Shown here: in pieces, positions 2,530 through 59,688 of the stretch
Position numbering within the stretch: the stretch's first letter is position 1
Layout of the letters: each line of letters starts with the position of its first letter
NCBI RefSeq assembly: GCF_963853765.1
Contig: NC_088860.1
Coordinates: forward strand, 30,380,001 to 30,444,000
DNA from: Magallana gigas
Taxonomy: Eukaryota
DNA: 64,000 bases
Direction: 5' to 3'
The notes under the pieces: generated by a model
The model's database searches: none
What the model was told of the DNA's origin: nothing
What the model saw: the letters and a program-made list of their open reading frames with translations, nothing else
Translations under genes and position numbers: made by a program

Positions 2530-5500
2530 TTGAGCAATGCAGAAGTTTATTAAGCCCCACTGTGGAAAATAGATGACTAGGAATGCAGCAACAACACATT
2601 TCAACAGTTCTGACAATGCCACAGATACAACCTGTAATTAAAAACATATAAGCGCATCTCTGATTGTATATATCACAAATGCTTCACAAACTTATATTAA
2701 TAATTATCATATAAAGCTAAGAAAAAAGATGTTTGATTTGTTGGTGGAGTAAGTAAATATATGTAACAATTAAGCTGTTCCCTGGGAGGTGGAATGTTTA
2801 AAAATTTAGTTTGTATCATGATAAGCTCTAATACATGTACAAAACCCATCTCCAAATATCCAATTTTTAAATATTCTATAAAGTTATATATATATTCGAT
2901 AAATGTTCCCACATTGACTTATGAAAAAAAGTATTAAAAGGGTACTATAAATGCATGTATTGATAATCTTGCTTAGTATAACTTTATTTTCCATGAAAAA
3001 TCAAAACAATTAATTTGCATGATACAAAATTAATTTTTCCAGCAGTATATCAAATCACATGCAAAATTAAAATTGCTAATCTCCAAGCAGCTAAAATATT
3101 GAAATACATGTATCAAATGGTAGTCAATTCTGTCTAAAGTATGTTCCAACCATTAGAAACATGTAATTATGAATGCTTGTAATAATTGACTTACCCTGAG
3201 TCTGTTAAACAAGTGGCACTGTCCAATAATGAAGTGGGGCCTGGCTAGTGTAGTGATTATAGTGTTCAAACAGAAGCACAAGACACCAACTCCATAGTAA
3301 GGAATGCTCTCTGGATCCGGACTCTCCAATCCATACATCCAGATAGATCCAAATATAAAACACACAACGATACTCATTGGAAACCTGAAATAGAGATAGT
3401 TAGAACATAGGCATCATACATTCAAACTCTAAACAAATTAGTTCTTGACTCATATGCTGATTAATAAATTGGGGCTGCCATGGCCAGGGTAAGTGTACAA
3501 GTACATGCAATCTGTAAGTGCAACATCCACACAACTTTGTTCCATGTAAGTTTAACCTACTGAATATAATATATACACCACAACATACACATCATTAATT
3601 CATTAAAAACCCAAAACCTATGAAGGTATTTTATTTTTAAATGTTAACATAGTAAAAGCTTTCTTTGAACAAAGTTTCAACTATATAAAGAAGGCACCGT
3701 AATGATTTCCCTCGGACCAGCATCAGGCTCCTACTATCACTTACTCACATCAGATTGACTATATATATAGCTATCACTTACGTTAGCCACATCAGATTGA
3801 CTAGCTATCACTTACATTGGCCACATCAGATTGACTAGGCTATCACTTATGTTAGCCACATCAGATTGACTAGGCTAAGCTATTACTTATGTTAGCCACA
3901 TCAGATTGACTAGCTATCACTTATGTAAGCCACATCAGATTGACTAGCTATCACTTACATTAGCCACAACAGGTTGACTAGTTATCATTTACGTTAGCCA
4001 TATCAGATTGACTAGCTATCACTTACGTTAGCCACATCAGATTGACTAACTATCACTTACGTTAGCCACATCAGATTGACTAGCTATCACTTACATTAGC
4101 CACATCAGGTTGACTAGCTATCACTTACATTAGCCACATCAGATTGACTAACTATCACTTACGTTAGCCACATCAGATTGACTAACTATCACTTACGTTA
4201 GCCACATCAGATTGACTAACTATCACTTACGTTAGCCACATCAGGTTGACTAGTTATCACTTATGTTAGCCACATCAAATTGACTAGCTATTTATTACTT
4301 ACATTAGCCACATCAGATTGACTAGCTATCACTTACATTAGCCACATCAGGTTGACTAGCTATCACTTACGTTAGCCACATCAGGTTGACTAGTTATCAC
4401 TTATGTTAGCCACATCAGATTGACTAGCTATCACTTACGTTAGCCACATCAGATTGACTAGCTATCACTTACATTAGCCACATCAGGTTGACTAGCTATC
4501 ACTTACATTAGCCACATCAGGTTGACTACCGGTAGTTATTACTTACGTTAGCCACATCAGATTGACTAACTATCACTTATGTTAGCCACATCAGATTGAC
4601 TAACTATCACTTACGTTAGCCACATCAGATTGACTAGCTATCACTTACGTTAGCCACATCAGATTGACTAGCTATCACTTACGTTAGCCACATCAGATTG
4701 ACTAGCTATCACTTACATTAGCCACATCAGATTGACTAGCTACCACTTACGTTAGCCACATTTGATTGACCACTTGTCGCCAGTCCTTGTTTTCTATCTT
4801 GCTGAGGCAGGCCTGATCGAAGGACTCGGTCGCAATGAACAGAGTGGTGGTGTATAGGAGAGTCAATCTGAGAAAACAGAATACATAACATTAAATTAAT
4901 CTGTATATAAATATAACTATAGATTGACAGAAAAATGACAAAAATACCATAATTAAATACCAGTAGAAGGCATTCACACTGCCTTAAAAAAAAAACACTC
5001 GGTTAAAAGTAACGTTACTTTATTTTAATATTTCAAGAGAAGGACAAAATTTGGAGCTCATCATTAGTAAAATTATTATTCATTAATAAATTAGTTTCTT
5101 TAATTGCTCATAATATTTTAAATGCAATATGGTATTAACAATTGATAATTTATAGCATCTCAATAGATGGAGGAGCCCAGAAAAAGTCTAATGTTTAGTA
5201 AGGGTACATAAACAACAATATTTTATCTTAGGCACCTTAAAGACACAAGCTAGGGCATTACAAAATACCACATCTAACTATAGTTTAAATAATGTTGATT
5301 TTTACCCTACAAATAAAAAAATTGAGTTTTACTTTAAAAATAAGCTCGAGAATACACTGTGAAAAAAGTAATTGCTTCCAATTTTAGATAATGCAGAAGA
5401 TTATATTCGTTGGTTTTTTTTCCTGCTTTGCTTTTTGTGTGGCATATGTACATCATGTATGCTATCTATCTGAATTATAACATAGCAAACTGGCAAGTTG

Positions 5501-6795
5501 TTTTCATCTAATAAGCTTCAATTTCTGACATTAAAATGGTTGCCTGATAAACCCGTACTGAATGACACATATTATTTAGAGAATTTCCCTTCAAGATGTA
5601 GACATGTATGCTTTTAAGAACATCTTTCAATTTGGAAGATAGATAGTTTATTTGTATGTGTGTCAAGACCTTGAACCATACTTCTGGGTTGAATAAACTT
5701 ATAAAAAATGAGTGGTGTAAATTGTCATCATTTTGTTGAAGATTAATATTTTCATCCATGATTGACAACAAACTTTCTGGGCTGACTATATATACCGGTA
5801 GTAATTCAATATCAATCACTAAAATAATCACAATTACTAAATATATGTAGATATGTATTCACTGCTCAAGCTTCTAATACAAAAAAAAAACAAACCATGC
5901 GCATGATAAACAAATATATTTATGCTGGGTTTTTTTTTTAAATTCCCCCAAAACATAAAAAAACCAAAAACCAGCATTTGGGTTTTTCCAAACTTGTGAT
6001 AGTGATCTCAGCTGTTTTGCCCCAAATTGCACTGATCTGCTGTCAGACTCTTAATAGTTTGATAAAACATGGGAGTTCTAAGATGCATCCTAAATACATC
6101 AGGTCATAAGTAATGTCTAACTTTATAGGACTTATATTCATATACCAGGTACTTGTAGTTACTCTCCAAACTCCCTTGCCAAAAAAAAGTCAAAGAATAG
6201 TGTGCACTTAATTAATTTGCCTCACCAGTGCCCATAGTGTAACAAGGATTTTTTTTCTGTCTTTCTGATTCATTTTCCAAATTTATAACAAAAATAGTAC
6301 ACTTTCAAAATGGTTTCCTTCCACAGGACATACTTAGGAGCTAAAAAAAAATTATCAAGAGTATGACCATTCTTTTATTCCATATGGATAATTTTACTGG
6401 CATATCAAACAACCATGCGAACTAAATATCAAGTTAAATGTGGGCATGTAACCTAAAAAAAATTGATATGGGTACATGGGTCCATTTCATGCTTAAATTC
6501 TCAGGTCCAGTTCAATGCCTTTAGAGTAGGCAAACACAACTTAACTATTAAAGAATGTGTAATTGTATCTTTATGTTAAATTTGTAATATTTTTTTTAAT
6601 CAACTAGTTCCAAAACTGAAAAAAAAACTATTCTTTTAGTGACCATTGCCACAGTGTAAGTCTAAATATATCTATTGATAATTGTTTACTACATGAAGAC
6701 ACTGCGTCTGCAGGGTCAAGATTCCACAAATACCACCTGCTTAAACTGTATCATTGATGGACATGGAAAAGCTTTCTCTCTCTCTCTCACTCTCA

Positions 6796-6826
<31 letters not shown>

Positions 6827-8618
6827 TACCTGACATTGACCACTCCTAGCAATTCCTTGGAAATATACCTCAGTACAACTCCATTCAGAATAAATGTCAT
6901 CATTCGAATACATAACTGAAAAATAGGATGAATCAGTAGGTCAGGATTAGATTCATACACTACTACTCTGCAATTATTTTTGGTCAAAGTTTTTTGAATT
7001 CATATAACAGTGGTCTTACAACAGCCTCAGTTTTGTACAATTGAAATCCTGATATAATTAAAAAAAATAAACTAAAGAGGTCTACCAACATTTAATTCAC
7101 TACAGACTAGGACTTCACATTTTAATTTCAAAAATGAATTATATATGAATAATTAAAAAAAAAAAATTCTTAACAAATAATCTGAATTAACGGTATTTAT
7201 ATTTACTATGTATAAAGTATATAAAACTATGTAGCTATAAAACGGTATTTTAATTAACGGTATTTATATTTACTATGTATAAAGTATATAAAACTATGTA
7301 GCTATAAAACATGGAGTGCTGCAGAATTTATTAGCTTATTAGCTAGGCTGTTCATAGCTGCAGAACTGTAGCTCTCCGGGAAAAAAAATATTGACAGACC
7401 GGAGAGCTACAGGGCCACCCATTGAAAAAATTGTATATTTATTGCGCAGAAAAACGTGCACTAGTTTTCGACTGATTTACCTTATTTATACGCAAATTCT
7501 GTGAAAACAATTAGTACCATTAAATTCTTCATGCAATTTACTACTGATATCGCCTCTTTATTTGCCTCAGACTTTCAACGAAACACGCTACCGACCTAGG
7601 AAAATCAAGTATGTTGAATTTACATCGAGATTGATAGTCGCCATTTTTACATGTAAACAAAGTGCACCACATGAATTTACGGGACTGGTGATGGTGTTTA
7701 AAAGAATATCCGAGGCAAGTGAACAGACGATATCAGTAGTAAATTGCATGAAGAATTTAATTTTACTAATTGTTTTCACAGAAATTGCGTATAAATTAGG
7801 TAAATCAGTCGAAAACTAGCGCACATTTTCTGCGCAATAAATATACAATTTTTTCAATGGGGGGGGCCCTGTAGCTCTCTGGTCTGTCAATATTTTTTTT
7901 CCCGGAGAGCTACAGTTCGTCAGCTAGGCTGTTCAATAAGTTTATAGAGATAATACCACATAGGTACAACACTCTATTGCAATGTACATCAATATCTTTG
8001 AAGCACATCTTTTAGCACTGAAGTGGAAAAAACCAATTCAAACTGGTTTATATATAAATAATTAGCATTGAATACAACTTGCTTTGTTATTACACTGGTT
8101 TGTGTTTTGTATCTTGAAATTTAATTCATAATCAGATGAAAACTACAGCATCCCTCATCATATATCATGGTATCATTCACAATCCCCCCTCCCCCATGAT
8201 GTTTTCTATAGGTAAACTGTCAACTTGATAATTATATCATTTCTCCATTTGATCTTAGATATCAGCACTCACTTTAAAAACATACATCCCCATAGGCTAT
8301 CTCTTGAAATGAGATGCATATTCGAACAAATACTTTACAGCCAAATATATATATACCATATGATGTATTTTAATTCATTAATTTAAAAAATGGTTATTAA
8401 AACTGTATAATAATTTATTTTTTAATTCAAAATATTTATTTACTGCTAAAGTAATATCAGTGTATAAATGTGTGAATTTTGAGAGAAATGTTGTTGCTAA
8501 TCACTAATCTAAAACTTGCGATCGAAAGATTAATTTATAAACTGTTCATTCTCACCTGTAGGGCCATGTTATAAGTAGCCGCTCTGGCTGCACCAGCTAA
8601 AAGATCCTGTCCTTTCAT
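2530..8618 (-). CDS. RFT1: Protein RFT1 homolog (Man5GlcNAc2-PP-dolichol translocation), coding exons 1-5; gene continues beyond the left edge
   Basis: Exons 8618-8556 ([21 protein letters not shown]), 6915-6830 ([29 protein letters not shown]), 4867-4751 ([25 protein letters not shown]), 3384-3195 (..[24 protein letters not shown]), 2631-2530 ([34 protein letters not shown]). All are GT-AG and phase-consistent. Peptides match the RFT1 N-terminus as I recall it ([35 protein letters not shown]). No exon 6 was found in 1-2529. Confidence 0.93.
3734..4770. repeat. 34-bp minisatellite (~30 units) derived from the RFT1 exon 3/intron 3 donor junction
   Basis: Unit ctatcacttacgttagccacatcagattgactag. 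On the minus strand it reads ..tgtggctaac|GTAAGTgatag, and the last unit overlaps the real exon 3 end at 4751. Confidence 0.95.
6774..6820. repeat. (CT)n microsatellite
   Basis: CT run adjacent to the RFT1 exon 2 donor. Confidence 0.9.
7355..7926. mobile_element. Foldback MITE with ~200-bp terminal inverted repeats and 9-bp TSD (Mutator-like)
   Basis: Left arm tagctgcagaactgtagctctccggg...ctactgatatcg is the reverse complement of the right arm cgatatcagtag...cccggagagctacagttcgtcagcta. Direct repeat ggctgttca at 7346-7354 and 7927-7935. Confidence 0.85.
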
Positions 8619-9037
8619 TTTTTTTTTTTAAATCGTGCTTGGATAAAATTACCACAGCGTTAAAAACTACACACTATGCACCAACAATAGCCATGCAAGG
8701 TAGAGAAAATCCTTCGAATTTCCTGACATTGCTTTTCTTTGGTGAATGAACTACCAATGAATGCTGATCCAGCTGGCCGATGCCGCAACGTCGACTAAAC
8801 CGAAAGTGAAACTACAGGTTTGAACCCGATCTTTAAATAAAATCAGGTAAATAATATTATTTGAACATAATGTTCTTTATAAAATAATAAAATAAAAATT
8901 AGTGAAAAATTAATTATTTTTATTCAATTTTGTGGGTTATTTCATTCATGACAATGTGCTTCAATGAAGATTTTGACATCAACAGTTACTCCCCTTTATG
9001 AAAGAACTCTTCAGTGTGTTATGGTTACCAGTCGAAC
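8619..9037. promoter_or_regulatory. Bidirectional promoter region RFT1/CCT7
   Basis: Start codons of the divergent genes are only ~420 bp apart (8618 and 9038). Contains gaaagtgaaact at 8802-8813. Confidence 0.7.
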
Positions 9038-12000
9038 ATGATGGTAAGTGAAATTGTGTTGTCTTAAAATCCATCCCCATCCTCGATTAGCTTAAACTCT
9101 TTATCAAATGTGAACATTGTTCTGAACTGCATGTATTGTGATGGTTGAATGTGATCACTTATATATTAGTTTTAACCTTAGCTTAGAAAATGATTTTAAT
9201 GTCTGTTTTGGAAAATATGCAAGTAATCACATGTTGTTCTGGAATGTTCAGAAAATGACTAACATGACGCTGCAATAGTTTAACAAAACTAAGAAATCTT
9301 TCTACCATAAAGAAATTTGGAAATTATTATCATATCAAATGTAACATAGTTCAGCATGCATGAATCCCCAGGAATCACAAGTTATTTTTTTAGAAAAATA
9401 CTTAATAGTTATGATTTGAGCTGAAGCTGAAAAAAAAAATACATTCCAAACTGTAAAGAAATTAATGAATAAACCATACTCAAGAGCTTGTTATTTATTA
9501 TTTTTGCTGCCTTCTTAATATAATGATAGGAAATGGATTTATATGCAAATATACAGAATGGGGGGGGGGGGGGGTTAATAGTATGAATTTCAGCTGCATC
9601 GAGTCTTGTTTCATTTATACTTATAAGTATATTTTTACTTCAAAACCAGGATAATAATATTTTAACTATTATTTTTTTTAATTTCAGCAACCACAGATCA
9701 TCTTGCTGAAGGAAGGGACTGACTCCTCTCAGGGGGTTCCTCAGATTGTCAGCAACATCAATGCCTGTCAGTCCGTAGCTGATGCCGTCCGAACAACCCT
9801 GGGCCCAAGGGGAATGGACAAACTTATCATCAATGATCAAGGTGCATATTAGTTGGAATAGCTTAGTGTGTCTCAGACAAGCCCTTCACCACAGACTGTA
9901 GTTGCAATGAAGCAAATTGGAGTGAATATGCTCCAAACTGATTTTGAAGAAAAGAGTTCAAACTATGCTGCAAAAAAATTCAAAATGTATCTTCACAAAT
10001 TTTTTTGAGCTTTTGTATTTATATATGTCCCAACATGTGACATACATGTATTCTTTGTTTTGCAGGAAAGTCCATAATATCAAATGATGGAGCCACCATT
10101 TTGAAAAATTTAGACATTGTGCATCCTGCTGCTAAAACTCTAGTAGACATAGCTAAATCTCAAGATGCTGAGGTTAGTAAATTTACTAGTTTGAATTTTC
10201 TAAATTTACACTTCTTTGATTAAAATATGAAAAGTAATAGGTCTCTTTCAGCTATGTTAAAAGGGCCAAATACATATATAAGTTTATTATTTGATTTTTA
10301 GGTTGGAGATGGTACAACATCTGTAGTTTTATTAGCTGGGGAATTTCTTAAACAATCCAAACCATTTATTGAAGAGAATGTCCATCCACAAATTGTCATT
10401 AGGGCCTTTAGGAAAGCAACAGATCTAGTAAGTTCAGATCTACATATATAATGTTACTGTAAATCCAAAGAAAAAGAAATTAATCCCTGGTTTGCAGCAC
10501 AGTTCAAATTCTTGTGTGCTTTTAACTGTTTAAGACAAATTTTTGTCTTTAGAGTTAAAAGAAATACCTCTATGATTTTGGGCCTGCTTCAAAGAGGGTA
10601 AAGTAATTGAAGTCGTGAGACTGGGTTGACAAACCATGTTGACTCAGTTCGAACTCCTTTGAACACTTGCAGAGATGTGAGATTGTATTGCATCTTGCTT
10701 GTGATTTTCACCGGATTGTTATATGTTGTGTGTAATTTAATAGTCGATTCTTATCGCGATAAAGATGTTGTGGCGTATTTTCTGCTTCCAGCATGTCTCT
10801 CTACAGCTGGTTTCAATTACTTAATTCATGATTACTTACAAAAAATTCCAATGTGCTTTCTAACTTGTTACAATTCAGCAATTTGACAAAAATATCATTG
10901 CTCATTGATATTGTATTCCTATTTTCAAAAGGCTGTTCAACGAATCAAAGAAATTTCTGTCAAAGTCAAAAAAGATGATAAAGGGTAAGTAATTTGTGTA
11001 AAAGCTTGGAAGATGATTTTGAGGAAAAAATGTTTTGAGTGAGCATCTACCAGTAGTAGTTTTAATATTTTTAATATAAATATTAACAGGGAACACAGAG
11101 AGCTTCTAGAGAAGTGTGCAGCCACAACATTGAGTTCAAAGCTTGTCGCTCATCAAAAGGACTTCTTTGCAAAGATGGTAGTGGACGCTGTCATGCATCT
11201 AGATGAATTGCTTCCTTTGAACATGATTGGTGTAAAGAAAGTCACAGGAGGGGCATTAGAGGTAAGCTAGACTAATGATTGTCCAATGTTAGCTATAGTA
11301 ATATTTTGAGGGAAAGAATGCAACAGATCCACCGATAAGTCAACTACAAGATTTGTTGCCTATACTTGTGGTGTTACATCAGTGGAAAATAAAGAGCTAC
11401 TACCTCTTGTATCAGTCTCTGGCTGTTTTAGTCAGGATAGATATGTTAGGGGTACAGCTTTCTTCCTTGAGAGTTGGTCTTGTGCTTTTCTCTGAATTAG
11501 ACCATAGCTTGTGAAGGTACACTCACATTGAGTAGATTATACTCTGTGCTATTGAAATCAAACAAGTAGTTCATACCAAGCAAGTTTTGAATATAGCTGA
11601 ATAGATAGGTTACTGGTTATGAAACATTATGTGGACGAAAATTAGTTTCTTATAAGATGCATTTTCATCATTGCTGTGTATTGTTACTTTATAGGATTCC
11701 ATGTTAGTTGCTGGTGTCGCTTTCAAGAAAACCTTCAGTTACGCTGGTTTTGAAATGCAACGAAAGCAGTATGAGAAACCCTTGATAGCTTTACTAAATG
11801 TGGAACTGGAGCTGAAGGCAGAGAAGGAGAATGCTGAAGTCCGAGTAGACAATGTTCAGGTAATCTATCAATACAAATGTCAAACATTGGTTGATACATG
11901 TATTAAGGTAGTGTTAACAAGAAAATGAATCAATGTACTTGTACCTACATGAAAACTCTTTATAATTTTAGGAATATCAGTCCATTGTTGATGCAGAGTG

Positions 12001-16417: not shown

Positions 16418-17481
16418 AGACAATCTAACCCTAGGAACAAATTATGAACAAAAGGATTCCTGTCGTTTAACTTGGCAAAGTAGATCTGCAAAGTGGTGAT
16501 TTATTTCAGAAGTGTTTTCAAAATTCCTCCAAAATGACATATACAAATGGAAACGTGAAGTATTCCTGTGTTCAACTGTTCATCTCATCACTGAACATTA
16601 ACAGCCCTGTTGGGCTCAGTACTTAACTCGTGTGAAATCCCCATTGTGAGAGACTGAAAATTCTGTGAGAGCTGTGATGTACATTAGATTAATGTATGAA
16701 CTTTTTATTTTAATTGTGCTTTATATATTTATTATTTTGAGAATAAAATCTACTGAATATATACAGCAACTGAATTATTGTGTACCAGTATGTAAGGAAG
16801 CTCCACAGCTCTTAACATATTTGGAGTTAACCAGTGTCGTTGCATATTTGTTGTAAACTCACTGGACATATACCTCTTTCACAAAGGTTATTTTGCTAAA
16901 GTTAAAAGAACATTAAATAGATGTTAATTTAATGGTGTGGTAGGATGTGGAGAAGGTAAAGATAATCTAGTCCCAAGTTGCTGGATTTGAATCGATAAAA
17001 ATTTCTTTATCCTAATTTGTGTCCCATATATATACAAACTTTCGATCAGTGATTTTATTTTTAAAATGTCTGGTGTAATTGAAGGGTTATGGTTTCAGTA
17101 CAAGGAATTCAACCTGGCAGCCTAGCAGCCAACGAAATAAAATTTGATTGGGAATGAGAGGGAATGAAAATGTATTGGTAGTATACGTGCATTGTACCTG
17201 ACTTAAAATCTTGCATTTTGAAATGGTAATAATGAATACTATAAAGGAAATGTTTGTGTTTAAGCTTCCTGTTATAAATCATGATACTGATGACCTCATC
17301 TAGCATGAACTGCCTTAATATGGTGTTGGCCTCTTCATAAGACAGAAGGATGCAAAGAAACATGTCAATGAAGGGAGACTAGCTTGAATAGTTCCTGGCT
17401 ACTGATAGAGAATTAATGTTGGGGTTTTGTAGCATTTGTTAAAAAGGATCTTGCCATGAACCTTGTTTCTGGGCTTGTGAA

Positions 17482-17810
17482 GGTGGCTCACTACACTGTA
17501 AAATATTTTCTCAAATCAGCAGAAAATTACTTGATTATGATAGATATCATAATGGATAAGAAGTATTTAAGTCCAATAGGCAAAAAAATTTGCAATTTTG
17601 GATAAAAAATTACATTTTCAAAAATTTAATTCAGTTAACATAAACAATAGCTCAAGGCAGATTTGAACTCATGATCTACGGTTCAGAAGCCCAATACTTT
17701 AACCACTGAGCTACAATGATATACAACCTAACCGAACGATATAAAAAGTTTAACAAAACATTTAAATCGCCATCTTGTGACATAGCTTCTTAAAAGTGTA
17801 GTGAGGTACC
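17482..17810 (-). mobile_element. TTAA-type MITE (Kolobok/piggyBac-like) containing a tRNA-derived segment
   Basis: TIR ggtggctcactacac / gtgtagtgaggtacc followed by ttaa. The interior is the inverse of the copy at 59741-60092. Bases 17656-17714 read gtagctcagtggttaaagtattgggcttctgaaccgtagatcatgagttcaaatctgcc on the minus strand. Confidence 0.75.
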
Positions 17811-18732
17811 TTAAAGCTGAAAACTACTTGTTAAGCCTTATTAGGGCCCTTCTTTGTAGGCACCCTACAGTAATCAGTCCATCTGTTCTTCCATTTGTCC
17901 ATCCAAGATCGCTTGTCCGGAGCATATCTTCTTTCCACTTGGTCCAATCTGGCTCATACTTCACACACAGCATGCCTTTGGGTAAAGAATGTGCAGTGAC
18001 CCTGAACCATGTTTCTAGGTTGAAGCTAAAGGTCATAGCAGAATTATATGAAAAATCCTCGCCCAGAGCAAATCTTTTTTATCCCTTTGGTCCAATCTGG
18101 CTCACAGAGTGCCTATGATCAAAGGGTTTACAGTTATCTTAAATGATGTTTGTAGGTCAAGTGTCATGGTAGTGTTGGATCACACTAAATTATTTTTAAG
18201 AGCACGTATATTCTAGCTCTCCACTTGGCCCTATTTGGCTCCTACTTCACATTAACAGAGCTTTTTGGATTAAGATGTGCAGTGACTTGAAAATTTGAAC
18301 CAAGTCAATGTGAAGGTCATAGTGGATCTCTTAATAATCGGTTTTAGACTGTAGATTATTTCCCATTAGCTTAATCTTGCTCAGGTTGAAAAAAATGCTT
18401 GTATGTTTTTTTATAAGTTATAGGTCAAGGTCAAAGAAAAATTCTCTGAAATGCTTTTCATCCTATTGTCCATTATTTCAGTGGGGACTTTAAAGATGGT
18501 CACCATCTCAATGTTGTCTAGATTGTTATCCTTTGCCTCTATCCCTACAACTCTCTATATATAAGCCTCTTGCCTTTAAACTGTTTAAAGTATTTTAAAT
18601 CTGTTGTTTATGTCCTTTTGCATCATCAATCATGATAATTAATGTGTCCACAAACTGGAACTGTACAGATTACTTCTACTACTGTAGTTTCCAGCAGAAA
18701 AAGATAATATACAAATTGCATTAATATTTTAA

Positions 18733-22305: not shown

Positions 22306-22341
<36 letters not shown>

Positions 22342-48268: not shown

Positions 48269-49741
48269 GCCTATGGGCCACATCGCTCACCTGAGCAACA
48301 ATAGCCATTTAATAAGATATCAGATATATGGATTCAGATCTAAACAAAACATCTGGACAATGAAGTAAAATACTTGTTCCTGTATAAAAAGTTTTCAAAC
48401 TTTTCTATTAATGTTCTTATGTTAATCATAGAACCTTTTAAAGACGGGATGATTTCGTAGTCATATCACATATTGAGTATTGCAGTTCACAAGAAGACTT
48501 AAACAATTGTTCATATATCTATAAACCTACATCAAATTTTGAGCCCCTGTTAGGGCCCTAAAATTTTCCAAGGACCACAGTCAAAGCAGTTGAGAAATCA
48601 ATCAAAAATATGGCAAGATGCTCACATATATAAGACTTAGTAAATATACCAAGTACATATATTATAGCATTTAAGTTTTTGAAACTAATGAGAATTTTTT
48701 TCCTATGTGAAAATTGGATCCCCAACCCCAGAAGATCGCGATTTTGATTATCTTGAATCTACACAATCTATGGATGCTTTCACCAAGTCATAGCTTTTCT
48801 AGACGATTGGTTTTTTTTAAATGGGATTTTTAAAGGTTTTTTTTTTTTTTTTTTAGATATTTTTATGTAAAAAGTGACCCCCTTATCGTGACCCAACCCA
48901 ACCCAAGGATCATGATTTGAACAAACTTGAAACTACCATACCAGACAAATGACAACTTTTATGGCCAAATGAATTTTTATACATATTCATAAGTAAAAAT
49001 TTAAGCCTCCTTTGTAGCCACAACCTACCTCTGGTAATCGTGATTTGAACAAACTTAAATCTACACTACCATATGTTGCTTCAAGTTACAGCTTTATTGG
49101 TCAATTGGTTTTTGAAAAGAAGATTTTCAAAGATTTTTCTCTGTATATTTCAATGGAAAAGAATCGACCCCGCCCTCCCATTGTGGCCCCACCCTACCCC
49201 AAGGGATCATGATTTGAAATAACTTGAATTTACACTACCAGAGGATACTTCCAAACAATTGACAGTTTTTCTGGCTCATTGGTTTTTGCATCGTCGGATA
49301 CCCACGGGTGATCGCGTCTTTTACTTATCACCCGTGGGTATCCGACGATGTGGTTTTTGAAAAGATTTTTTTTCTATCTATTCCTTTGTAAAACTTCGAC
49401 CCCCCCCCCCCCCCCCCATTGGGACCCTACCTAGTACCTACCCCCGAGGATTATGCTTTGAATAAACTTGAATCTACATTACCTGAGAATAATTTCAAAC
49501 AAGTTTCAGCTTTTTTGGCCAAATAGTTTTTGAGAAGATTTTTTTTAATACCAACAATTTTTCAAACATTTTTTAGTTATTTCTCATTGAAACAGGGCAT
49601 GTCCCTTCATTTAACAAACTTGAATCCCCTTCACCCAATAATGCTTTGTGCCAAGTTTGGTTTAAATTGCCTAGTGGTTCTGAAGATGTCGACAATGTAA
49701 AAAGTTTATAGACGGAAGGACTGACTGACGCCGGACAAAAA

Positions 49742-49784
<43 letters not shown>

Positions 49785-49786
49785 TA
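48269..49786 (+). mobile_element. Older HINE element with degenerate Cg170-like monomers
   Basis: 5' atgggccacatcgctcacctgag; diverged satellite monomers; 3' hairpin agctcacttgagctttcagctcaggtgagcta. Confidence 0.8.
49289..49350. mobile_element. 62-bp hairpin mini-element with perfect 24-bp TIRs and 9-bp TSD
   Basis: catcgtcggatacccacgggtgat + 14-nt spacer + atcacccgtgggtatccgacgatg; tggtttttg duplicated at 49280-49288 and 49351-49359. Confidence 0.85.
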
Positions 49787-50658
49787 AAATAAAAAAAAAA
49801 ACAAGATTGATGAGATAAAGATTTCATAACTTGTATATATATCCATTGCAATGGCATTTTCTCACAAGACAAAACATTTACTGAAGCTTTTAGTTAGACT
49901 TGCTTAGGTCTCTGTTGTTTTAATGTTTTATATTTCTTACAACTTTTAACGTTGTTCAGAAATTTGAAAGTTCTGCCATACTCAAATGGCATTAAACACG
50001 TTTGACATCATTGTAGGTATTTTAAAAGAATGTGTTATTAAATAGAGAGACTTGCAAGTCTAGCTTTTAGTTCATATCGGAAAATACAAGGAGCAAAGAG
50101 ATCAACGTCTAAGCAACAACCGCACAGCCATGACAGAGAAACGAAATGTATCAATAAAATTTGTGCGATATACAGTCTCCATTTACAAGCTTTAATGAAT
50201 GTGTCTGTAACAGTTTAAAATCTAATCTAAGTACTCAGTATTACAACTAACTCCTTTCTCCTACAACACTCTCCAGCCATCGCCTCGAGCCACGACCAGG
50301 AGTCTGCATAGCTCTCTCCTACTAGATGGTAAGGATCGTACAAATTAGCCGTGGTTTGCGACGATGGTTTTTTTTGCTGAATGACGTAAATACCCGTGCT
50401 TTTGTAACCAGCATATCAAAATAAAATCAACACAACCGTAATTAATGTAAAAGAGGAGTTACCCAAAGATACACAAATCAACCCGTACAAGAATCTTCAT
50501 TATATGAAAACTCGCTTTCTTTTGCAATACACACATAACCAGTCGAACTTGCATGTTTGCTATGAAAGAAAATTGCAAACGATTTGGTCAACGTTTGTAA
50601 ATCGAAATTCCAAAGCCCATTTATGATAATACAAAAAAGAATTGGAATGGAACGTTTA

Positions 50659-53600
50659 TTACACTTTGACTAAATCTGAGGACAGGTCTTGGTTGTCGAT
50701 CACAACTTCTGTCTCTATTTTTGACAACGTGACGTCACTGTTGGATTTTGACGACGTTGTTTGTGGCGTTTTGTCCGATACGTCATATTCACTGCTGTCT
50801 GCCGTTTGTAGACTGTCCGATTTCAGTGCCCGTATGCATCTCTAAATGGAAAGAAAATTAACAAATTAAATTTACAACTATAATACCTTGAAGTTATTCA
50901 AGTTAATCACACGCCCCTTTACCGGCCCTTCATGGTTACAGATATAGGTAACTACCAAAAACAAGCGTTGAATTTTTTTTTTCAATATACAGGTGTAAAT
51001 TAATTAATGTGTTTGTTTAACCTATACGTATACATCATTTACATGTGCTAATGTCGGTAACTTATAACTACACTAATCGTAAAACAATGAATCATGGGAT
51101 TTTTGTCCGTCCATCTGAGATCCGGTATAAAACGTGTAAGGAAACTAGATTATTTAACCTTATGTAACTAATGCTTTAATCAGGAGACAACGTTAAGGAG
51201 ACTGAATGATCAATAAATCGACCACTAGTCCTTCCAAACATTTTAAAATATGATTTGTTGAGCTATAAACTATAATTATTTAGTAAAGAAACAATCCACA
51301 CATTTTATCTATTTTCCTATATTTTCAAATTCAACTCTTCATCTAAAGAAGAGCAAAATAGTCTAAAAATGGCATCGACCATCAAACACAATTAATTTGT
51401 ACGGAAGCAGAAAAAACAATGGTAGATAGATACCTCGGTAAACGAGCCCTTCTCGGTGTAGACGGCGTGGAAAGCCCCCAGTATGAAACCAAAGATGACG
51501 GGCCCGACGGCTACAAACCACCCCAAGCACTGTCTGTCGTCACTGGCGACCCCCTCAGCTTTAGGGTCCCTAATGGTGGCGGGGAATGGGTACACGTACA
51601 CAGCAAAGTAATAGATCAGCATGGCCTACAAACAGGAAAAAAATAATTCTAATTAATTAATTAAGTAACAATTTGATAGATCATCATGACCAGTGCAAAA
51701 TAAATGTAAAGGCTCTTATTGTATGAACAAACTCAATTAAAAAACAACATTGCCTACAAATTAATGGTAAAAATTGCCAAGACCTCAATAATATCAAACT
51801 GTCGTATCAATTAAATACGAGTAACGGGTCATATTTTGCACTCCATGCCAGCAATTAAAATGCAAGTACATTATAATTAATAACAACCGTGTATTGTATG
51901 TATAAAAGATTTACATGTAACAGAAACAGGAGTTATATAATTATATTTACATTTATCAGTGTCTTTGCATGTGTACGTTTGATTTTGTACGATACAGTCT
52001 AATAAATTCAAATGCATATAATTTGGGCGCAAGCGGGGTTTGCTTTTTTATATTTAAATATTTTATCGTACAATTTCTGAAAATTATCAAATCTATCATA
52101 AAGCCCTTCGGGCTTTTTTTGGATTTGATCACGCCCCGACCGAAATTATCACCTCATAATAACCAAAGAATGATTCCTTATTCCTTAAATAAAAAAAAAT
52201 CAGAAAGCGTATAGTAAATGTTGACTCCGTGACTGACCGCTATAACAAGAGAGGAGGCTCCGTACCACAGACTCATCAGGGCGCGCTCCAGCAGCAGGTA
52301 CATCAGGTTCTGTTTGACTGCAAGGATACACGATATAGGTCTGTACAATACTGAATATTCTATGGTGTTATATGTATTGTTAATATGTCTGTGGTGTTAA
52401 TTTTAGAAAGGGTTAATTTTGTGGATGCTTAATATTGTGGTTATACCGACTGCGCATAGCCAATGACTGTGGGGACAATATGGTTTTATCCTGTTATACA
52501 TATTGTTTATATTATTTATACTGACTATAGCGGTTGATTATATAATCAATACTGACTGTAGCCGATGACTGTGGGGACGATACTGACGATGATCACCGTG
52601 AAGATCAGACGGTCCAGGTAACTGTTGACCAGCATGTACAGGTAAACGCCGCTCTGGAAAACCATACAGGTAGCAAACAATGAAAACCATACAGGTAGCA
52701 AACCATACAGGTATCAAAAACCATACAGGTAGCAAACAATGAAACTTAGTGACCTGCTTGCTTACTCTACCACCAATATTGTCTAAATGCGCATGGGGGT
52801 TTTTTCTACTAGTAATTTGCATTATTATAATATGATATGAACTATGCAATTACTGCACAAAACTATTGTATTTTTGCAAAAGCCCTTCGAAATGTTTTGG
52901 CTGGAAATACGCATGCTCAAAATAACTACAACATTTGTTCATAGAAAAAAAATGCACTACAATGAATTTGCATAATGGTCAACATTGCTAGCAAAAGATT
53001 ATACACGTGCTATAAAATTATTCATCACAAATTTTGAAAGATGTTATGCAATTTCGTATCTGCTATGATATTAGCTTATCTTTGTGATATTAGATCTGTA
53101 ACTCCGGGTCTGAAATTTTGTTTTGAATTTTTTCAGACCAGGAGCTACAGACATGCAGCTATTATATGTAATACCACGAAGTTTATACTGTAGAAAACAA
53201 TTAAAGCAAGGAGAAAATCAATCAGTCCCTTTCTAAACCCGTTTTTCTGTTACTAACACACAACTGCTATAGCTTTCTTTTCTTTTTTTAATGGATAAGT
53301 TTGTTTTTATTTATACAAACCGTAAAAAAATACGAAACTACTAAGTCAAACATACCTGGAAACTGTATGGAATGCACAATATGAAAGAGAGGAAGGACAG
53401 TATTGCCACCAACGTAGACCTTCTCCGGAAGAACTGCAGTATACAGGTGGGCAGAGAACACAGCAGGGCCTCCCAAATCACCGTCAGATGCAGCACCTGC
53501 GTGATTCCGTCAAAACAGTATTACATATACTATAGTATATTGTTGGGAAAAATTACATAATGATCCTCTGTATTGTAGTATTTTTTTTTATGACATGAGT

Positions 53601-56600
53601 TTTAAAAAATCTGTAAATTTATATAGAATATAAATACGCAACAGGGTTAATTCTGATATCAAGTCATTTTTCACAAGCTTTTTCATTCAATTTTATCATC
53701 AACATTTTGATGAAGTTTTGTGTGTGTGTGTGTGTGTGTCCAGTGACATTTTTTTTCTAAACATCTTTTCGATTTGCAGAAGTAGAAAATTGTTTCAAAA
53801 TTAATGAGAAAAAAGCAATAAAATACCATGTGGAGTATCCCTAGGAGATACACTCCTAAGTACAGGCACATTGCAATGCCGGGCACGTGACGGATTTTAC
53901 CAAACATTCCCAGAAGAAGGAGACCCAAACCTAGAAACAAATCAACAGAAGTTGTACAATGTTTGGCCATAGTCATTTATGAATAATTCAATACATAGAT
54001 ATTTCGCTTTATCTGAAAAATATTATATCATAAAAGTATCTGAAATATTTTTAGAAGTGATTCTTTATTACCCGGTTTCAGTTTTTCTCCGTATTCAAAC
54101 ATGCCATAGTTTGAATTAGTGGAAATGAAAGGAATGAAAGCAATACCGAACACCACAGGTACCAAGCCGTATACAAGGAATAGGATCACGTTAGCCCTGG
54201 GAGACGAGAGGAAGAAAAACTAATAATGTTTGTCTTATAAATGATTTAAGAAAGTAAATACATGTAAAGCATACCAATCCGGCAGAATGATTCATAATTC
54301 ATATGAGGTTTTGATAATATGGATCAGACAAAAACGCACTGTGTATTGGTTGGTGGGAGGGTAAAAAGACGGTCGTATCAGTAAGCAAGAATTCTTGCAC
54401 ATAAAATGCCATATTTATTTTCCATATTTTCTTTGTCAAAACGTATTCTTTAGTGCTTAAAGAAAAAGAGACTTTTGTAAAAGAAGCTCTCTATAAGTTT
54501 TCATACGCACTTACCTTACAATCGTGGTTTTGTTGTTGTAGAGATGGGCGCCGATGGTAGGGAGGACCCCAGACCACAGCCCCAGGGAATAGATGTGCAG
54601 AATCAATGCATTCATCCAGGGCTGAAAAAACGCAGAGCAATATAAAACTGGAACAAAGTAAGAAGGAGAATCAACTTTCGAATATTTCCGGAACCTTGCG
54701 CAAGATTCTCCAACTTCCTATATTTCAATAGTAAATTATATGGACACTGACTGTCCCGTATTTGATTGTTTAGACAAGGAAATTACGGCAAAGGAAATAG
54801 AAGTTTGTATTCACAAACTCAAAACAAACAAAAGTGCAGGGAACGACCAGCTAATTAACGAATATTTTTCCGAATTTCAACTTTTGTTTCCTAACCGTCG
54901 TGACTTCTTCTCCTGAGATTACCTGGGGTGAGTAGAGTTTGGCCAGGGACAGGCTCCACACCCCCAATTCTTGATCTTCCTGTTCCTCGTCGATGTTTTT
55001 TTCGTGGTAAGAGAACGAACCATTGACCTCCACAAGACTCCCAAATGGCTCAGAGGGGGCCACCGGAGGAGGGGCCACCCAACCATAAACGAGCACCACT
55101 AGCAGAAGAATCAAAGCCGTGGGCGATAGGACGAATGCCAGCTGTAATAAAGTGGGCGACATAATAAAGGATAGCTGTAACAGAGTTGGCGATATGATAA
55201 GGACCAGCTGAAATAAAATGGGCGACATAATAAAGAATAGCTGTAATAGAGTGGGCGATATGATAAGGACCAGCTGTAATGGAGTGGGCAATATACTGAA
55301 GGATAGCTGTTATAATGTAGGTGATATTATAAAGACCAGCAGTAATAAAGTGGGCGATATAATTAGGGATAGCTGTAATAGAGTGGACGATATGATAAAG
55401 GTCAGCTGTAATAAAGTGGGCGATATGATTAAGAATAGCTGTAATAGAGTTGGCGATATGATAATAAATAATGTAATAAAGTGGGCGATATAATAAAGGC
55501 CAACTGTAACAAAGTGGGCGATATAATTAATGATAGCTGTAATAGAGTAGGCGATATCATAAAGGGTGGGCAATTTGATAAAGGTCATATGTAATACTAG
55601 TAGTTTGGCCGATAGGCTAAAGACCAGCTACAGTAGAGTGTACATCAATGAATGGAGAGAACTTTTAATATACACCTTGTTTAAGAAGTCAGACTGTGGA
55701 GTAAAATGTTTCAGATGTCTATTTATAGCATTTTTTCAATAGAGATATCTAATTAAATATGTAATGTGCGTGTATATTTCTATTCTATCATTCTTGATTG
55801 ATTCATTTTAAAATGCAAATGATATACATGTAGTATTTTTATCGTACGGGTAGTTTTTAAAAGTAAATATGCATTGCACATTGACGCGTATCCTCTGCAT
55901 TTTTTTTTTTACCTTGTTCATAAACGAAGGTTCTTTAGCAGTGCACATGAAGAGTAGAAACCACGTGACCAGTAGGGCAATGGCCAAATACCACACCATG
56001 TTACCTTCCTCGGACAGTCCATCGGAAATCTGGAGAAAATACTCCCTGCAATGAGAGCAAATGATTTGAGTGACTTCATGTTTTTCAGGGGAAAAATACA
56101 CAATTTTTTTTCTTCAGTAAAACGTCATGAAAAAAACAATCTAGCGTATTGTACAAATATTGACAATTAAGAATGATAAACTTCCGCATGATGTAGAATA
56201 TGTTTGTATTTTAAGAAACAAAATCTTACTTGAAGAATACAATTGGCCTCTGGTGACCAGACCTAAAGGAATAAGACACGGGTGAAATTTGCAAAAATTA
56301 AATAAATTTTAATGAAACATTCCTGTTACAAAGCAAACAAAATTAATTTAAAGAACAAAATCACAATGAGAAACCGAGCTGCGAAATCCATACATTTCCG
56401 AGTGGTTTGGGTGAGAAGATTCGTCATACGGGGAAAAGAAGGAGGCGAAGGCATAGTAGAGACAGTAGCTGAGTTCTAGACTGCCCGTCAGGCTCCTGAT
56501 GTAGGAGAGGATCAGGATGGTTATAGCACAGCCTGTAAAATATCGGGGGTGAAGATGGTTATAGCACAGCCTGTAAAATATCGGGGGTGAAGATGGTTAT

Positions 56601-58345
56601 AGCACAGCCTGTAAAATATCGGGGGTAAAGATGGTTATAGCACAGCCTGTAAAATATCGGGGGTAAAGATGGTTATAGCACAGCCTGTAAAATATCGGGG
56701 GTGAAGATGGTTATAGCACAGCCTGTAAAATATCAGGAGTGAAGATGGTTATAGCACAGCTTGTAAAATATCGGGGGTGAAGATGGTTATAGCACAGCCT
56801 GTAAAATATCGGGGGTGAAGATGGTTATAGCACAGCCTGTAAAATATCGGGGTGAAGATGGTTATAGCACAGCCTGTAAAATATCGGGGTGAAGATTGTT
56901 ATAGCACAGCCTGTAAAATATCGGGGGTGAAGATGGTTATAGCACAGCCTGTAAAATATCGGGGGTGAAGATGGTTATAGCACAGCCTGTAAAATATCGG
57001 GGGTTAAATTGCTAATTGCACAGCCTGTAAAATATCGGGGGTAAAGATGGTTATAGCACAGCCTGTAAAATATCGGGGGTAAAGATGGTTATAGCACAGC
57101 CTGTAAAATATCGGGGGTAAAGATGTTATAGTATAGCCTGTAAAATATCGGGGGTTAAATTGCTTATTGCACAGCCTGTAAAATATGGGGGGTAAAGATG
57201 TTATAGCACAGCCTGTAAAATATCGGGGGTTAAATTGCTTATTGCACAGCCTGTAAATTATCAAGGGTGACGACAAAATGCCAAGCTAAAAACCGTTTCT
57301 TGTTGACGGCTAATGCGTTTCTGTCCTATTTTACGTTAACTCTGCAATGAAAAAGCCATTATGTGAATACTTTTTGAAGAGATAAAAGGAGTTTTGTTTT
57401 TCTTCGTAGATGACATTGCTAATGAGATCTTTAATGATAGCAGTTTGTTTTCACAAATTGAAGATAAAAGGCGTGTAACAGGACGTTGATAAACGATTTT
57501 CCTTTCCACCGACATTGTGACGTATCGTGACAGGAACCGGTTGTCCTTTACATTTTTCCCGAAGAAAATCAATGAAATTATGACACATAGAAACACGGAA
57601 ACATAAGCTGGATGTCAAATATTCTAATCCACAATACAATACTGGTATAAATCAAATTACCGAACGTCTTTTGAGAAGGATATCTTTTATACTGAACATC
57701 TAGATGTCGTGGAGAATATCTTTAAACAAGCCTCCATGGGATCACTGCATTTCTGAATGCATTCATTATTCAATTATTCACATTGATTCTGAAGTGGAGT
57801 CGTAGTTTACTTATGCAAAAACTTAATTGGCTGCATTGTACATGTTGAAGAAATCGATCGTTCTGTGAACAGAATGCATGAGGAAGATGATTTTAAAATC
57901 ACCTAGACGACATGGTTTTTTCTTTCGATTTCTTCGATTATGCTCACCATTTTCTAACTACTGAGTACCCAATTTCTAGAAAGCAAAAAAAAAATCATTA
58001 CACGTATAAAGTAAAAGGATGAAATGATTAAAAAACCTGGCAGAACACCGATTTCAACAAGATTACCTAAAATGCATGACTTATTTGCTCAAACGCTACA
58101 AAACGAAATTACTCTGAGGTTTCAAGTTCAAGGAATATTTTATGGTTTACCTTTCAGAATGGGTACAAGCAAACTGTAGATGCCGAGGATATTCTGCCGA
58201 TAGATGGCGCCGAGCTTTATTTGGACGTAGCAGATTGGTACACAGAAAGAGAGCAGTATGATGTAATGAGCCAGAAGGTACGTCACTACAAGGAAAACGT
58301 AACGCAACGTTAGACATTCTACGTGAACATAACGAGATGTTCGCA

Positions 58346-58409
<64 letters not shown>

Positions 58410-59603: not shown

Positions 59604-59688
<85 letters not shown>

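What the first reader, a model, noticed from the sequence alone, without database searches (positions are those of the whole stretch)
3734..57258. Recurring system: minisatellites seeded precisely on exon-intron junctions
Seen: all three long non-transposon minisatellites in the window (34, 33 and 38 bp; two unrelated genes) have units spanning a splice junction, with roughly half exon and half intron sequence. All expand only into the intron, leaving the exon intact. Three of three is unlikely if arrays arose at random positions, given how little of the window is junction sequence (no formal test run). Inference: either a mutational process targets junctions (e.g. splicing- or R-loop-linked slippage), or selection keeps such arrays as splice rheostats or raw material for intron sliding and gain. 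Intron origin from tandem arrays has precedent, but I know of no description of this as a genome-wide junction-anchored class in bivalves.
Basis: inference. Interest (0 to 1): 0.8.

Follow-up and report, generated by a model that had tools for sequence, protein, structure and literature searches.

The report
Splice-junction minisatellites ("mirages") in oyster genes
Three introns in two oyster genes are largely made of tandem copies of their own exon edge plus splice signal, a kind of repeat already known as "mirages" in amphioxus and from a few human genes. The cell still splices at the copy that touches the exon.

Summary
All three long, locus-unique minisatellites in the window have a unit that spans a real splice junction.

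- A1: 34 bp, 30 units. It is built on the 5' splice site of an RFT1 exon.
- A2: 33 bp, about 13 units. A3: 38 bp, 20 units. Both are built on 3' splice sites of two exons of an expressed SLC6-like gene.

RNA contigs from three runs join exons only at the exon-adjacent acceptor of A2 and A3. Across nine exons these joints give one open reading frame. For A1, the Pfam domain continuity, the reading frame and mollusc RFT1 proteins all place the exon end at the first repeat unit.

A genome-wide motif test finds consensus donor motifs in 25-55 bp tandem arrays 2.5-3.9 times more often than the same motifs read backwards (pooled p about 2e-6). An acceptor motif shows no excess (1.16x, p = 0.43). Nothing supports a "splice rheostat".

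The class is not new. The amphioxus literature calls these arrays "mirages", at both 5' and 3' boundaries, with an intron-gain model. Human F7, IFI6, CBS, LMNB2 and PDGF carry donor versions. I found no bivalve paper.

This scan has already reported the same class on other parts of this genome, and one follow-up also named mirages.

Verdict: a new member of a known kind, of moderate interest.

The parts
3720..4770 (-). A1: 34-bp minisatellite of 30 units. Unit 0 (4737-4770) holds the functional RFT1 exon end and donor (exon ...GTCAATCAAATGTGGCTAAC|GTAAGTGG intron; cut between 4751 and 4750). Units 1-29 are decoys inside the intron.
   Evidence: TRF. Unit list: 22 of 29 decoys keep GTAAGT, and 6 read ATAAGT through CpG decay at the junction. 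Unique in the genome.
4751..4867 (-). RFT1 exon whose last 20 nt (V N Q M W L T) seeded A1
   Evidence: Pfam Rft-1 positions 44-88, E = 5.6e-5. Mollusc RFT1 proteins P0004 and P0006 read VVNLMW at this place. The start at 4867 is inferred from the acceptor and the reading phase.
3385..4750 (-). RFT1 intron, 1366 nt, about 75% of it A1 decoys
   Evidence: Donor and acceptor read. The frame AC|G closes only from the first donor. The intron opens G TAA, an in-frame stop.
3195..3384 (-). Next RFT1 exon (FPMSIVV...NRLR)
   Evidence: Pfam Rft-1 positions 92-153. 85 homologues in the representative library, including full-length RFT1 proteins.
55142..55565 (-). A2: about 13 copies of a 33-bp unit (66-bp higher order) made of the intron's last 10 nt (..TTATTACAG) plus the exon's first 23 nt. 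The copies lie upstream of the used acceptor, are in frame (11 codons each), and are the most diverged of the three arrays.
   Evidence: TRF (74-80% matches). Unit list. Unique in the genome. Unspliced RNA contigs cover 55114-55698.
54923..55141 (-). SLC6-like exon whose 5' end seeded A2
   Evidence: RNA joints 55141->55913 and 54621->54923 in runs X1-X3. In phase 0 of the open frame.
55142..55912 (-). Intron holding A2 (771 nt, about 55% array)
   Evidence: Joint with CT..AC ends in three runs.
56533..57270 (-). A3: about 19 decoy copies of a 38-bp unit made of the intron's last 21 nt (TTCACCCCCGATATTTTACAG) plus the exon's first 17 nt (GCTGTGCTATAACCATC). Each copy is a complete 3' splice site with a candidate branch point (TTCAC).
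   Evidence: TRF (92% matches). Unit list: 19 of 20 copies keep TTTTACAG|G. Unique in the genome.
56394..56532 (-). SLC6-like exon whose 5' end seeded A3
   Evidence: RNA joints 56531->58150 and 56260->56392. Open frame.
56533..58150 (-). Intron holding A3 (1618 nt, about 46% array)
   Evidence: Joint seen in X1, X2 and X3. GT..AG placement.
58151..58287 (-). Upstream SLC6-like exon (TM1-2 region) that is spliced to the exon behind A3
   Evidence: RNA contigs. Weak Pfam SNF hit at positions 39-81.
55913..56045 (-). SLC6-like exon that is spliced to the exon behind A2
   Evidence: Pfam SNF positions 163-198, E = 1.4e-4. RNA joints.

Best explanation
These are junction minisatellites of the 'mirage' type.

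**How they arose (inferred).** In each case a 33-38 bp piece straddling an existing exon-intron boundary was duplicated in tandem. The array then grew by slippage or unequal exchange to 13-30 copies.

**Why the genes survive.** The spliceosome uses the copy that is continuous with the exon body. That is the 5'-most donor in RFT1 (inferred from reading frame and homology) and the 3'-most acceptor in the SLC6-like gene (shown by RNA). Every other copy is therefore removed with the intron. The mRNA is unchanged and the intron is 0.4-1 kb longer; arrays make up 46-75% of these three introns.

**Function (inferred).** The arrays have no demonstrated function and are most likely tolerated by-products.

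**Frequency.** Arrays carrying a consensus 5' splice site are 2.5-3.9 times more common genome-wide than composition-matched controls. Some bias, in origin or in retention, therefore favours donor junctions in this genome. Its cause is unknown.
For: **Anatomy.** Units, junctions and copy lists are.

**Splicing.** Only the exon-adjacent acceptor appears in RNA contigs of three runs from at least two studies. The nine exons so defined give one open frame.

**A1.** Pfam Rft-1 is continuous across the intron, positions 88 to 92. The frame closes only from the first donor, and an in-frame TAA follows it directly.

**Direction exon to array.** A1 decoys encode N-L-M-W, the sequence of other mollusc RFT1 proteins. 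The live exon now reads N-Q-M-W.

**Not transposon-borne.** Each unit is unique to its locus.

**Not an assembly artefact.**
- RNA contigs run collinearly through A2.
- A contig from another sample starts inside an A1 unit and continues into the same distal flank.

**Copy number changes fast.** Paralogous gene pairs carry the same array at the same junction with 4.6 vs 44.6 copies, and with 814 vs 1086 bp.

**Genome-wide donor excess.** Array families with the motif vs with its reverse: AGGTAAGT 21 vs 8, AGGTATGT 12 vs 5, AGGTGAGT 21 vs 12. Normalised by single-site counts, pooled p = 1.7e-6.

**Precedent with the same behaviour.** F7, IFI6, CBS, LMNB2 and PDGF (PMC1557585); amphioxus mirages (PMC3087553).
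Against: - No RNA was laid on A1, so use of its first donor rests on frame and homology.
- Contigs drop rare isoforms, and products of decoy sites would be lost to nonsense-mediated decay. Low-level decoy use is therefore not excluded.
- Unspliced contigs across A2 reach a depth close to that of the exon in one run (11.3 vs 12.3). The array may therefore slow or impair removal of that intron, which would make it not quite neutral.
- The genome-wide test uses only three donor motifs and one acceptor motif, with one control each. Families were grouped by hand from listings cut at 100 rows, which cover chromosomes C1-C5, C1-C3 and C1-C8 respectively.
- The acceptor motif shows no excess, although two of the three arrays here are acceptor arrays.
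- A simple neutral model does not by itself explain a donor excess.
Confidence: 0.72

Rival explanations
1. There is a junction-targeted mutation process. Breaks or template switches happen preferentially at exon-intron boundaries. Possible causes are transcription or splicing-linked R-loops, or homology that ends at exon edges between very divergent haplotypes. Repair then leaves tandem duplications that span the boundary.
For: - Donor motifs are 2.5-3.9 times over-represented in arrays.
- All three arrays in the window, plus the single clean array in an unselected 200 kb, sit on junctions.
- The only other animal in which the class is called general, amphioxus, is also extremely polymorphic. 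The class comes from PMC3087553; the polymorphism is my own knowledge.
Against: - The acceptor motif shows no excess (1.16x).
- The junction sits anywhere in the unit, with 4 to 23 nt of exon, so there is no fixed break point.
- No de novo events or population data were available.
- The excess could equally come from retention.
Confidence: 0.3
2. The arrays are pure chance plus a filter. Tandem duplications arise uniformly. Those inside exons are purged, and those spanning a junction survive because the outer site is used. The apparent excess then comes from how arrays were selected (transposon-linked arrays set aside, window picked by the reader) and from an imperfect motif control.
For: - The window is one of several hundred read in this genome.
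- In the compact host genes, 8-12% of positions are junction-spanning.
- The acceptor motif shows no enrichment.
- Half of the donor-motif arrays inspected are not at exon ends (L024, L025).
Against: - A filter cannot raise junction arrays above the uniform expectation.
- Three independent donor motifs all exceed their reversed controls after normalisation (pooled p = 1.7e-6).
- Even the within-gene null gives p of about 1e-3 for this window.
Confidence: 0.2
3. The arrays are kept by selection because they work. They could act as decoy or auxiliary splice sites that tune splicing efficiency. Extra U1 sites could protect long AT-rich introns. In A2, the array could be an in-frame ladder adding 11-residue modules.
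For: - Most decoys keep perfect signals: 22 of 29 in A1 and 19 of 20 in A3.
- The A2 unit is 33 nt, and the frame stays open through about 4.5 copies upstream of the exon.
- Human IFI6 and CBS do use the first two pseudo-sites (PMC1557585).
Against: - Only canonical joints appear in three RNA runs.
- The A1 and A3 units (34 and 38 nt) shift the frame, and A1 decoys follow an immediate stop.
- High copy identity is expected from youth and array homogenisation alone.
- Variation at the A1 junction is plain CpG decay, with no sign of protection.
- Paralogues differ about ten-fold in copy number.
Confidence: 0.06
4. The arrays came first. A pre-existing intronic minisatellite was there, and the exon boundary slid into it. 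On this reading the exon edge derives from the repeat, not the repeat from the exon.
For: From sequence alone, the direction cannot be read for A2 and A3. Their exon starts did not reach a Pfam match.
Against: - For A1, the repeated exon part encodes the conserved RFT1 motif VVNLMW(L/C)T found in distant molluscs, and it lies inside the Pfam domain.
- For the fibrinogen-domain case, the repeated part is the conserved EFWLG motif.
Confidence: 0.03

Closest known systems
[quoted passage not shown]
   Same: - Tandem copies of a piece spanning an exon-intron boundary.
- They occur at both 5' and 3' boundaries.
- Copies carry AG/GT signals, yet normal splicing is kept.
- They are unstable in length.
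   Different: - A different phylum, mollusc rather than cephalochordate.
- The units here are short (33-38 bp, against 150-160 bp in the globins; Adh3 has 10-72 bp).
- Copy numbers here are higher (13-30, against 3-6 in BflGb6).
- Polymorphism of these three arrays was not tested here.
- A genome-wide donor-motif excess is measured here; I found no such measurement in the amphioxus paper.
Human donor-junction minisatellites: F7 IVS7 (37 bp x 5-9), IFI6/6-16 intron 2 (25 pseudo-sites), CBS IVS13, LMNB2, PDGF intron 4 (PMC1557585)
   Same: The first monomer spans the exon-intron boundary, so the authentic 5' splice site is followed by identical pseudo-sites. The most upstream site is used, and 5'-to-3' oriented scanning has been proposed as the reason. 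A1 has this architecture.
   Different: - The human cases are all donor-type and isolated.
- A2 and A3 are acceptor-type, where the last copy, not the first, is used.
- IFI6 and CBS also use the first two pseudo-sites. No such use was seen here.
Intron gain by tandem duplication across an AG|GT proto-splice site (Rogers model, as cited in PMC3087553)
   Same: A tandem duplication creates extra splice signals, and the sequence between them becomes intronic.
   Different: That model creates a new intron inside an exon from a single duplication. Here an old intron is lengthened by many copies, and no new intron position is seen.
Transposon-borne satellites of this genome (the 166/167-bp repeat at 931-1513 and 22657-23934)
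   Same: Tandem arrays in and near genes.
   Different: The 166-bp repeat is dispersed. It turned up in 3 of 20 random 10-kb pieces. The three junction arrays are unique to their loci.

Membership tests
Junction ('mirage'-type) minisatellite | Head-to-tail array of a short unit (minisatellite range) | tested here: met
   TRF: 34 bp x 29, 33 bp x 12.9 and 38 bp x 20.
Junction ('mirage'-type) minisatellite | The terminal monomer contains a functional exon-intron boundary | tested here: met
   A2 and A3: RNA joints end at the array's last acceptor. A1: Pfam Rft-1 is continuous across the intron and the reading frame fits; no RNA was laid on it.
Junction ('mirage'-type) minisatellite | The splice signal is reiterated in the other monomers | tested here: met
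   GTAAGT is intact in 22 of 29 A1 decoys. TTTTACAG|G is intact in 19 of 20 A3 copies, and YAG in most A2 copies.
Junction ('mirage'-type) minisatellite | The exon-derived part is older than the array | tested here: met
   A1 decoys encode the N-L-M-W of other mollusc RFT1 proteins. This is not resolved for A2 and A3.
Junction ('mirage'-type) minisatellite | Normal mRNA is made from the exon-adjacent site | tested here: met
   Only canonical joints appear in X1-X3, and the nine exons give one open frame. For A1 this is inferred only.
Junction ('mirage'-type) minisatellite | Length polymorphism or instability between alleles | tested here: inconclusive
- Indirect evidence: a contig from another sample enters A1.
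- Indirect evidence: paralogous arrays elsewhere differ, 4.6 vs 44.6 copies.
Transposon-borne or dispersed satellite | The unit recurs at other places in the genome | tested here: not met
   Whole-genome DNA searches return only the locus itself.
Multi-donor or multi-acceptor isoform ladder (IFI6-like) | Several repeated sites are used in stable mRNA | tested here: inconclusive
   No decoy joint appears in the contigs of three runs. Contigs drop rare forms, however, and the raw-read run barely covered the gene.

The most novel reading that the evidence does not exclude
Oysters, like amphioxus, may have a mutation process that preferentially duplicates exon-intron boundaries, above all 5' splice sites. 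One possible cause is that repair between very divergent haplotypes stalls where exon homology ends. Junction minisatellites would then be a major and continuing driver of intron length change and occasional intron gain in hyper-polymorphic marine invertebrates.
Probability: 0.25. Interest if true: 0.65.

Novelty: new member of a known kind. Interest (0 to 1): 0.4.

Why it matters
**If only the ordinary reading holds.** The arrays are a practical warning for gene prediction and read mapping in oyster genomes. Introns can hold tens of perfect decoy splice sites, and short-read assemblies break at them.

**A ready-made natural experiment.** The arrays also bear on how splice sites are chosen:
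- 29 identical donors, of which the first is apparently used;
- 19 complete acceptors, of which the last is used.

**The wider question.** Why are donor-junction arrays 2.5-3.9 times over-represented? The answer bears on how introns grow and arise, and it can be tested with existing oyster long-read population data.

Tried and rejected
**Genome sampling.**
- I planned a random 2-Mb sample for Tandem Repeats Finder with a permutation test. I replaced the plan with whole-genome pattern counts against reversed-motif controls.

**Statistics.**
- I rejected raw match counts as a statistic, because single long arrays dominate them (AGGTATGT 450 vs 290; acceptor motif 51 vs 87). I used hand-grouped array families instead.

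**Pfam.**
- The exons behind A2 and A3, taken alone, gave no hit. RNA joints and the open frame carry the argument instead.
- The L007 exon and the two L021 exons also gave no hit. Those exon calls rest on open frame, splice signals and motif resemblance only.

**Other assemblies.**
- The look-up of encoding contigs with a window ORF and with P0003 found nothing.
- P0002 gave a 941-bp contig too short to reach the array position.

**Readings rejected.**
- Assembly artefact: RNA contigs and an independent contig contain the repeats.
- Transposon origin: the units are unique to their loci.
- Array-first origin for A1: the repeated exon part is a conserved protein motif.


Full report
**What is in the window.** Tandem Repeats Finder reports three long short-unit arrays:
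- A1 at 3768-4770 (34 bp x 29, 89% matches);
- A2 at 55140-55565 (33 bp x 12.9, with a 66-bp higher order, 74-80% matches);
- A3 at 56516-57270 (38 bp x 20, 92% matches).

The only other long arrays are two 166/167-bp satellites (931-1513 and 22657-23934). The same satellite turned up in 3 of 20 random 10-kb pieces of the genome, so it is dispersed. The window is G000:C8:30380001-30444000 of a 564-Mb assembly. Whole-genome searches find the A1, A2 and A3 units only at their own loci. They are therefore not transposon-borne.

**The host genes and the junctions.** All relevant genes are on the minus strand.

A1 lies in an RFT1 gene.
- The exon 4751-4867 matches Pfam Rft-1 positions 44-88. The next exon, 3195-3384, matches positions 92-153.
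- The first exon ends ...GTCAATCAAATGTGGCTAAC|GTAAGTGG. The next begins after tctatttcag|G. The split codon AC|G closes only if the first donor is used.
- The intron opens G TAA, an in-frame stop.
- The A1 unit is the last 20 nt of the exon plus the first 14 nt of the intron.
- There are 30 units. The first is the live junction. Of the 29 decoys, 22 keep GTAAGT and 6 read ATAAGT. The variation at the junction is of the CpG-transition kind, ACGT to ATGT or ACAT.

A2 and A3 lie in an SLC6-like gene. Its Pfam SNF hits are weak: exon 55913-56045 at E = 1.4e-4 and exon 58151-58287 at E = 0.024. The exons behind the arrays do not reach a Pfam match by themselves, so I used RNA.

**RNA evidence.** I laid contigs of three RNA runs and raw reads of a fourth on 52700-58600.
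- They give eight distinct exon-exon joints with GT..AG ends on the minus strand (nine rows; two are alternative placements of one joint). These include 56531->58150 (three runs) and 55141->55913 (three runs).
- Placed by the GT..AG rule, the introns are 56533-58150 and 55142-55912.
- The acceptors used are ttttacag|GCTGTGC (A3) and ttattacag|CTGGCATT (A2). These are the array copies that touch the exon.
- The nine exons so defined read as one open frame of SLC6-like sequence.
- The A3 unit is 21 nt of intron end plus 17 nt of exon start. 19 of 20 copies keep TTTTACAG|G, and each has a candidate branch point.
- The A2 unit is 10 nt of intron end plus 23 nt of exon start. It is more diverged and is in frame (33 nt).
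- No joint from a decoy acceptor was listed. Contigs drop rare forms, and the raw-read run barely covered the gene.
- Unspliced contigs run collinearly through A2 (55114-55698). In one run their depth is close to that of the exon (11.3 vs 12.3). This shows that the repeat is real in RNA, and it hints at slow removal of that intron.

The arrays make up about 75%, 55% and 46% of their introns.

**Direction of origin.** A search of 1.84 billion representative proteins with the exon downstream of A1 returned 85 homologues, among them full-length mollusc RFT1 proteins. At the place of the A1 exon part they read VVNLMW.
- The A1 decoys encode V-N-L-M-W-L-T (CTG).
- The live exon reads V-N-Q-M-W-L-T (CAA).

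The repeats thus preserve the ancestral exon sequence. The array was copied from the exon, and the exon has since changed.

A short-read contig from another sample (87% identical in the intron) begins inside an A1 unit and runs into the same distal flank. The array is therefore not peculiar to this assembly.

**Is three of three more than chance?** With 60-120 junctions in 64 kb and units of about 35 nt, 3-7% of positions would give a junction-spanning unit. That gives p = 4e-5 to 3e-4. If arrays are restricted to the two compact host genes, p is about 1e-3 (the junction counts are estimates). The window is one of several hundred read in this genome, so this alone is not decisive.

In that unselected sample:
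- The short-unit arrays in L003 and L012 belong to one dispersed family, next to the 165-bp satellite and an ACGG-type microsatellite.
- The L005 array is a coding 87-90 bp repeat.
- One L007 array sits beside an inverted copy of its own unit.
- The single clean array (L007 6659-6769, 22 bp x 5) starts exactly at the end of an open frame that follows a good acceptor (...HTHYYTGTLT ACAG|GTTTAC). There is no Pfam hit, so this is a probable exon only.

Among arrays fetched because they carry AGGTATGT:
- One paralogous pair begins after a Fibrinogen_C exon ending EFWLG| (Pfam E = 6.5e-13). The two copies have 4.6 and 44.6 units.
- Another pair fills the intron between a Lys/Glu-rich exon and a probable RhoGAP exon, with arrays of 814 and 1086 bp.
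- Two further arrays (L024, L025) are not at exon ends.

**A genome-wide test.** I counted places where a splice motif recurs three times at a spacing of 25-55 bp. I compared each motif with the same motif read backwards. I grouped hits into array families by hand and normalised by the genome-wide count of the single motif.

| Motif | Families, motif vs reverse | Chromosomes listed | Single sites, motif vs reverse | Ratio | p |
|---|---|---|---|---|---|
| AGGTAAGT | 21 vs 8 | C1-C5 | 16,687 vs 24,509 | 3.9x | 5e-4 |
| AGGTATGT | 12 vs 5 | C1-C3 | 23,388 vs 28,569 | 2.9x | 0.03 |
| AGGTGAGT | 21 vs 12 | C1-C8 | 8,097 vs 11,517 | 2.5x | 0.008 |
| TTTTNCAGG (acceptor) | 18 vs 11 | whole genome | 42,760 vs 30,308 | 1.16x | 0.43 |

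The three donor motifs pooled give p = 1.7e-6. For AGGTGAGT the control is itself contaminated by GGTGAGTGGA donors.

Limits of this test:
- one control per motif;
- hand grouping of families;
- listings cut at 100 rows;
- no direct proof that each array sits on a real junction.

The result is a real excess for donor-type arrays. No excess is shown for acceptor-type arrays, although two of the three arrays here are acceptor arrays. An asymmetry is plausible. Upstream decoy acceptors are complete 3' splice sites that the spliceosome meets first, so they should be harmful more often than downstream decoy donors. This is inference.

**How it works.** The best-supported reading has four steps.
- A boundary-spanning piece was duplicated in tandem and expanded. 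The anatomy and the direction of origin support this.
- The gene is unharmed because the exon-adjacent site is chosen. This is shown for A2 and A3 and inferred for A1.
- The remaining copies are intronic ballast.
- Use of a decoy would shift the frame (units of 34 and 38 nt) or meet the stop that opens the A1 intron. Such products would be degraded.

I found nothing that supports a regulatory 'rheostat'. The cause of the donor excess, whether mutation bias or retention, cannot be decided with the data at hand.

**Comparison with what is known.**
[quoted passage not shown] The most upstream donor is normally used (PMC1557585).
- *Amphioxus.* The same structures are named 'mirages' (PMC3087553). 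[quoted passage not shown]
- *Bivalves.* I found no paper.

**Earlier findings of this scan.** Other follow-ups on other parts of the same genome reached the same reading. One also named mirages and called the class common. I found the amphioxus literature independently, before reading that note.

What this report adds:
- RNA-proven acceptor-type cases;
- the ancestral-codon evidence for the direction of origin;
- a first genome-wide motif test that separates donors from acceptors.

**Verdict.** This is a new member of a known kind, of moderate interest.

Noticed in passing
window 52683-52737 (minus strand), just upstream of the acceptor at about 52660: A small 16-18 bp x 3-4 repeat (GCTACCTGTATGGTTT) ends at ttttccag|AGCGGCGTTTACCTGTACATG, the acceptor of the last coding exon of the SLC6-like gene. 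A loose end of an RNA contig (place 53356) matches that exon start. The unit resembles the exon's first 20 nt (GTTTACCTGTA). It may be a fourth, small or decayed junction repeat.
   Followed up: partly
window 55114-55698: Unspliced RNA contigs cover all of A2 and run into the exon. In run X1 their depth is 11.3 against 12.3 for the exon; in X2 it is 4.6 against 19.3. The other introns show little or no coverage. The intron holding A2 may be retained or removed slowly.
   Followed up: no
window 4751-4770 compared with decoy units 3720-4736: The live RFT1 exon reads CAA (Gln) where all decoys read CTG (Leu). Leu is also the residue in other mollusc RFT1 proteins. This means two adjacent substitutions in the functional copy after the array formed, or an allele peculiar to this assembly.
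   Followed up: partly
window 3720-4736: The exon-intron junction of A1 is a CpG (AC|GT). The decoys vary there as ATGT or ACAT, the signature of methyl-CpG decay. Six decoy donors are inactivated in this way.
   Followed up: no
L026:1494-1612 and L029:1501-2647; L021:540-1625 and L023:1065-1878: Two pairs of paralogous genes on contig C1 carry the same junction array at the same exon end with very different sizes. The fibrinogen-domain pair has 4.6 vs 44.6 copies of a 26-bp unit. The probable RhoGAP pair has 1086 vs 814 bp of a 29-bp unit. Copy number changes quickly after gene duplication.
   Followed up: partly
L007:6659-6769: In the random genome sample, a 22-bp x 5 array (97% matches) begins at the last 4 nt of a probable exon with an ADAM-like propeptide look (...HTHYYTGTLT). 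There is no Pfam hit.
   Followed up: partly
window 931-1513 and 22657-23934; L010, L012, L016: A 165-167-bp satellite is dispersed in the genome, in 3 of 20 random 10-kb pieces. It is often next to an ACAGACGG-type microsatellite and to a 21-51 bp minisatellite family (ACAGAGGACAGCAAC...). It is probably carried by a mobile element.
   Followed up: no
window 35533-38444 (+): Three long open frames (373, 308 and 242 aa) have the look of a non-LTR retrotransposon, with a reverse-transcriptase-like middle frame. They lie between the genes.
   Followed up: no
window 51300-60600 (minus strand): The SLC6-like gene is very divergent. Only two of nine exons give even weak Pfam SNF hits. Yet it is expressed, correctly spliced and open across all nine exons checked.
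   Followed up: partly
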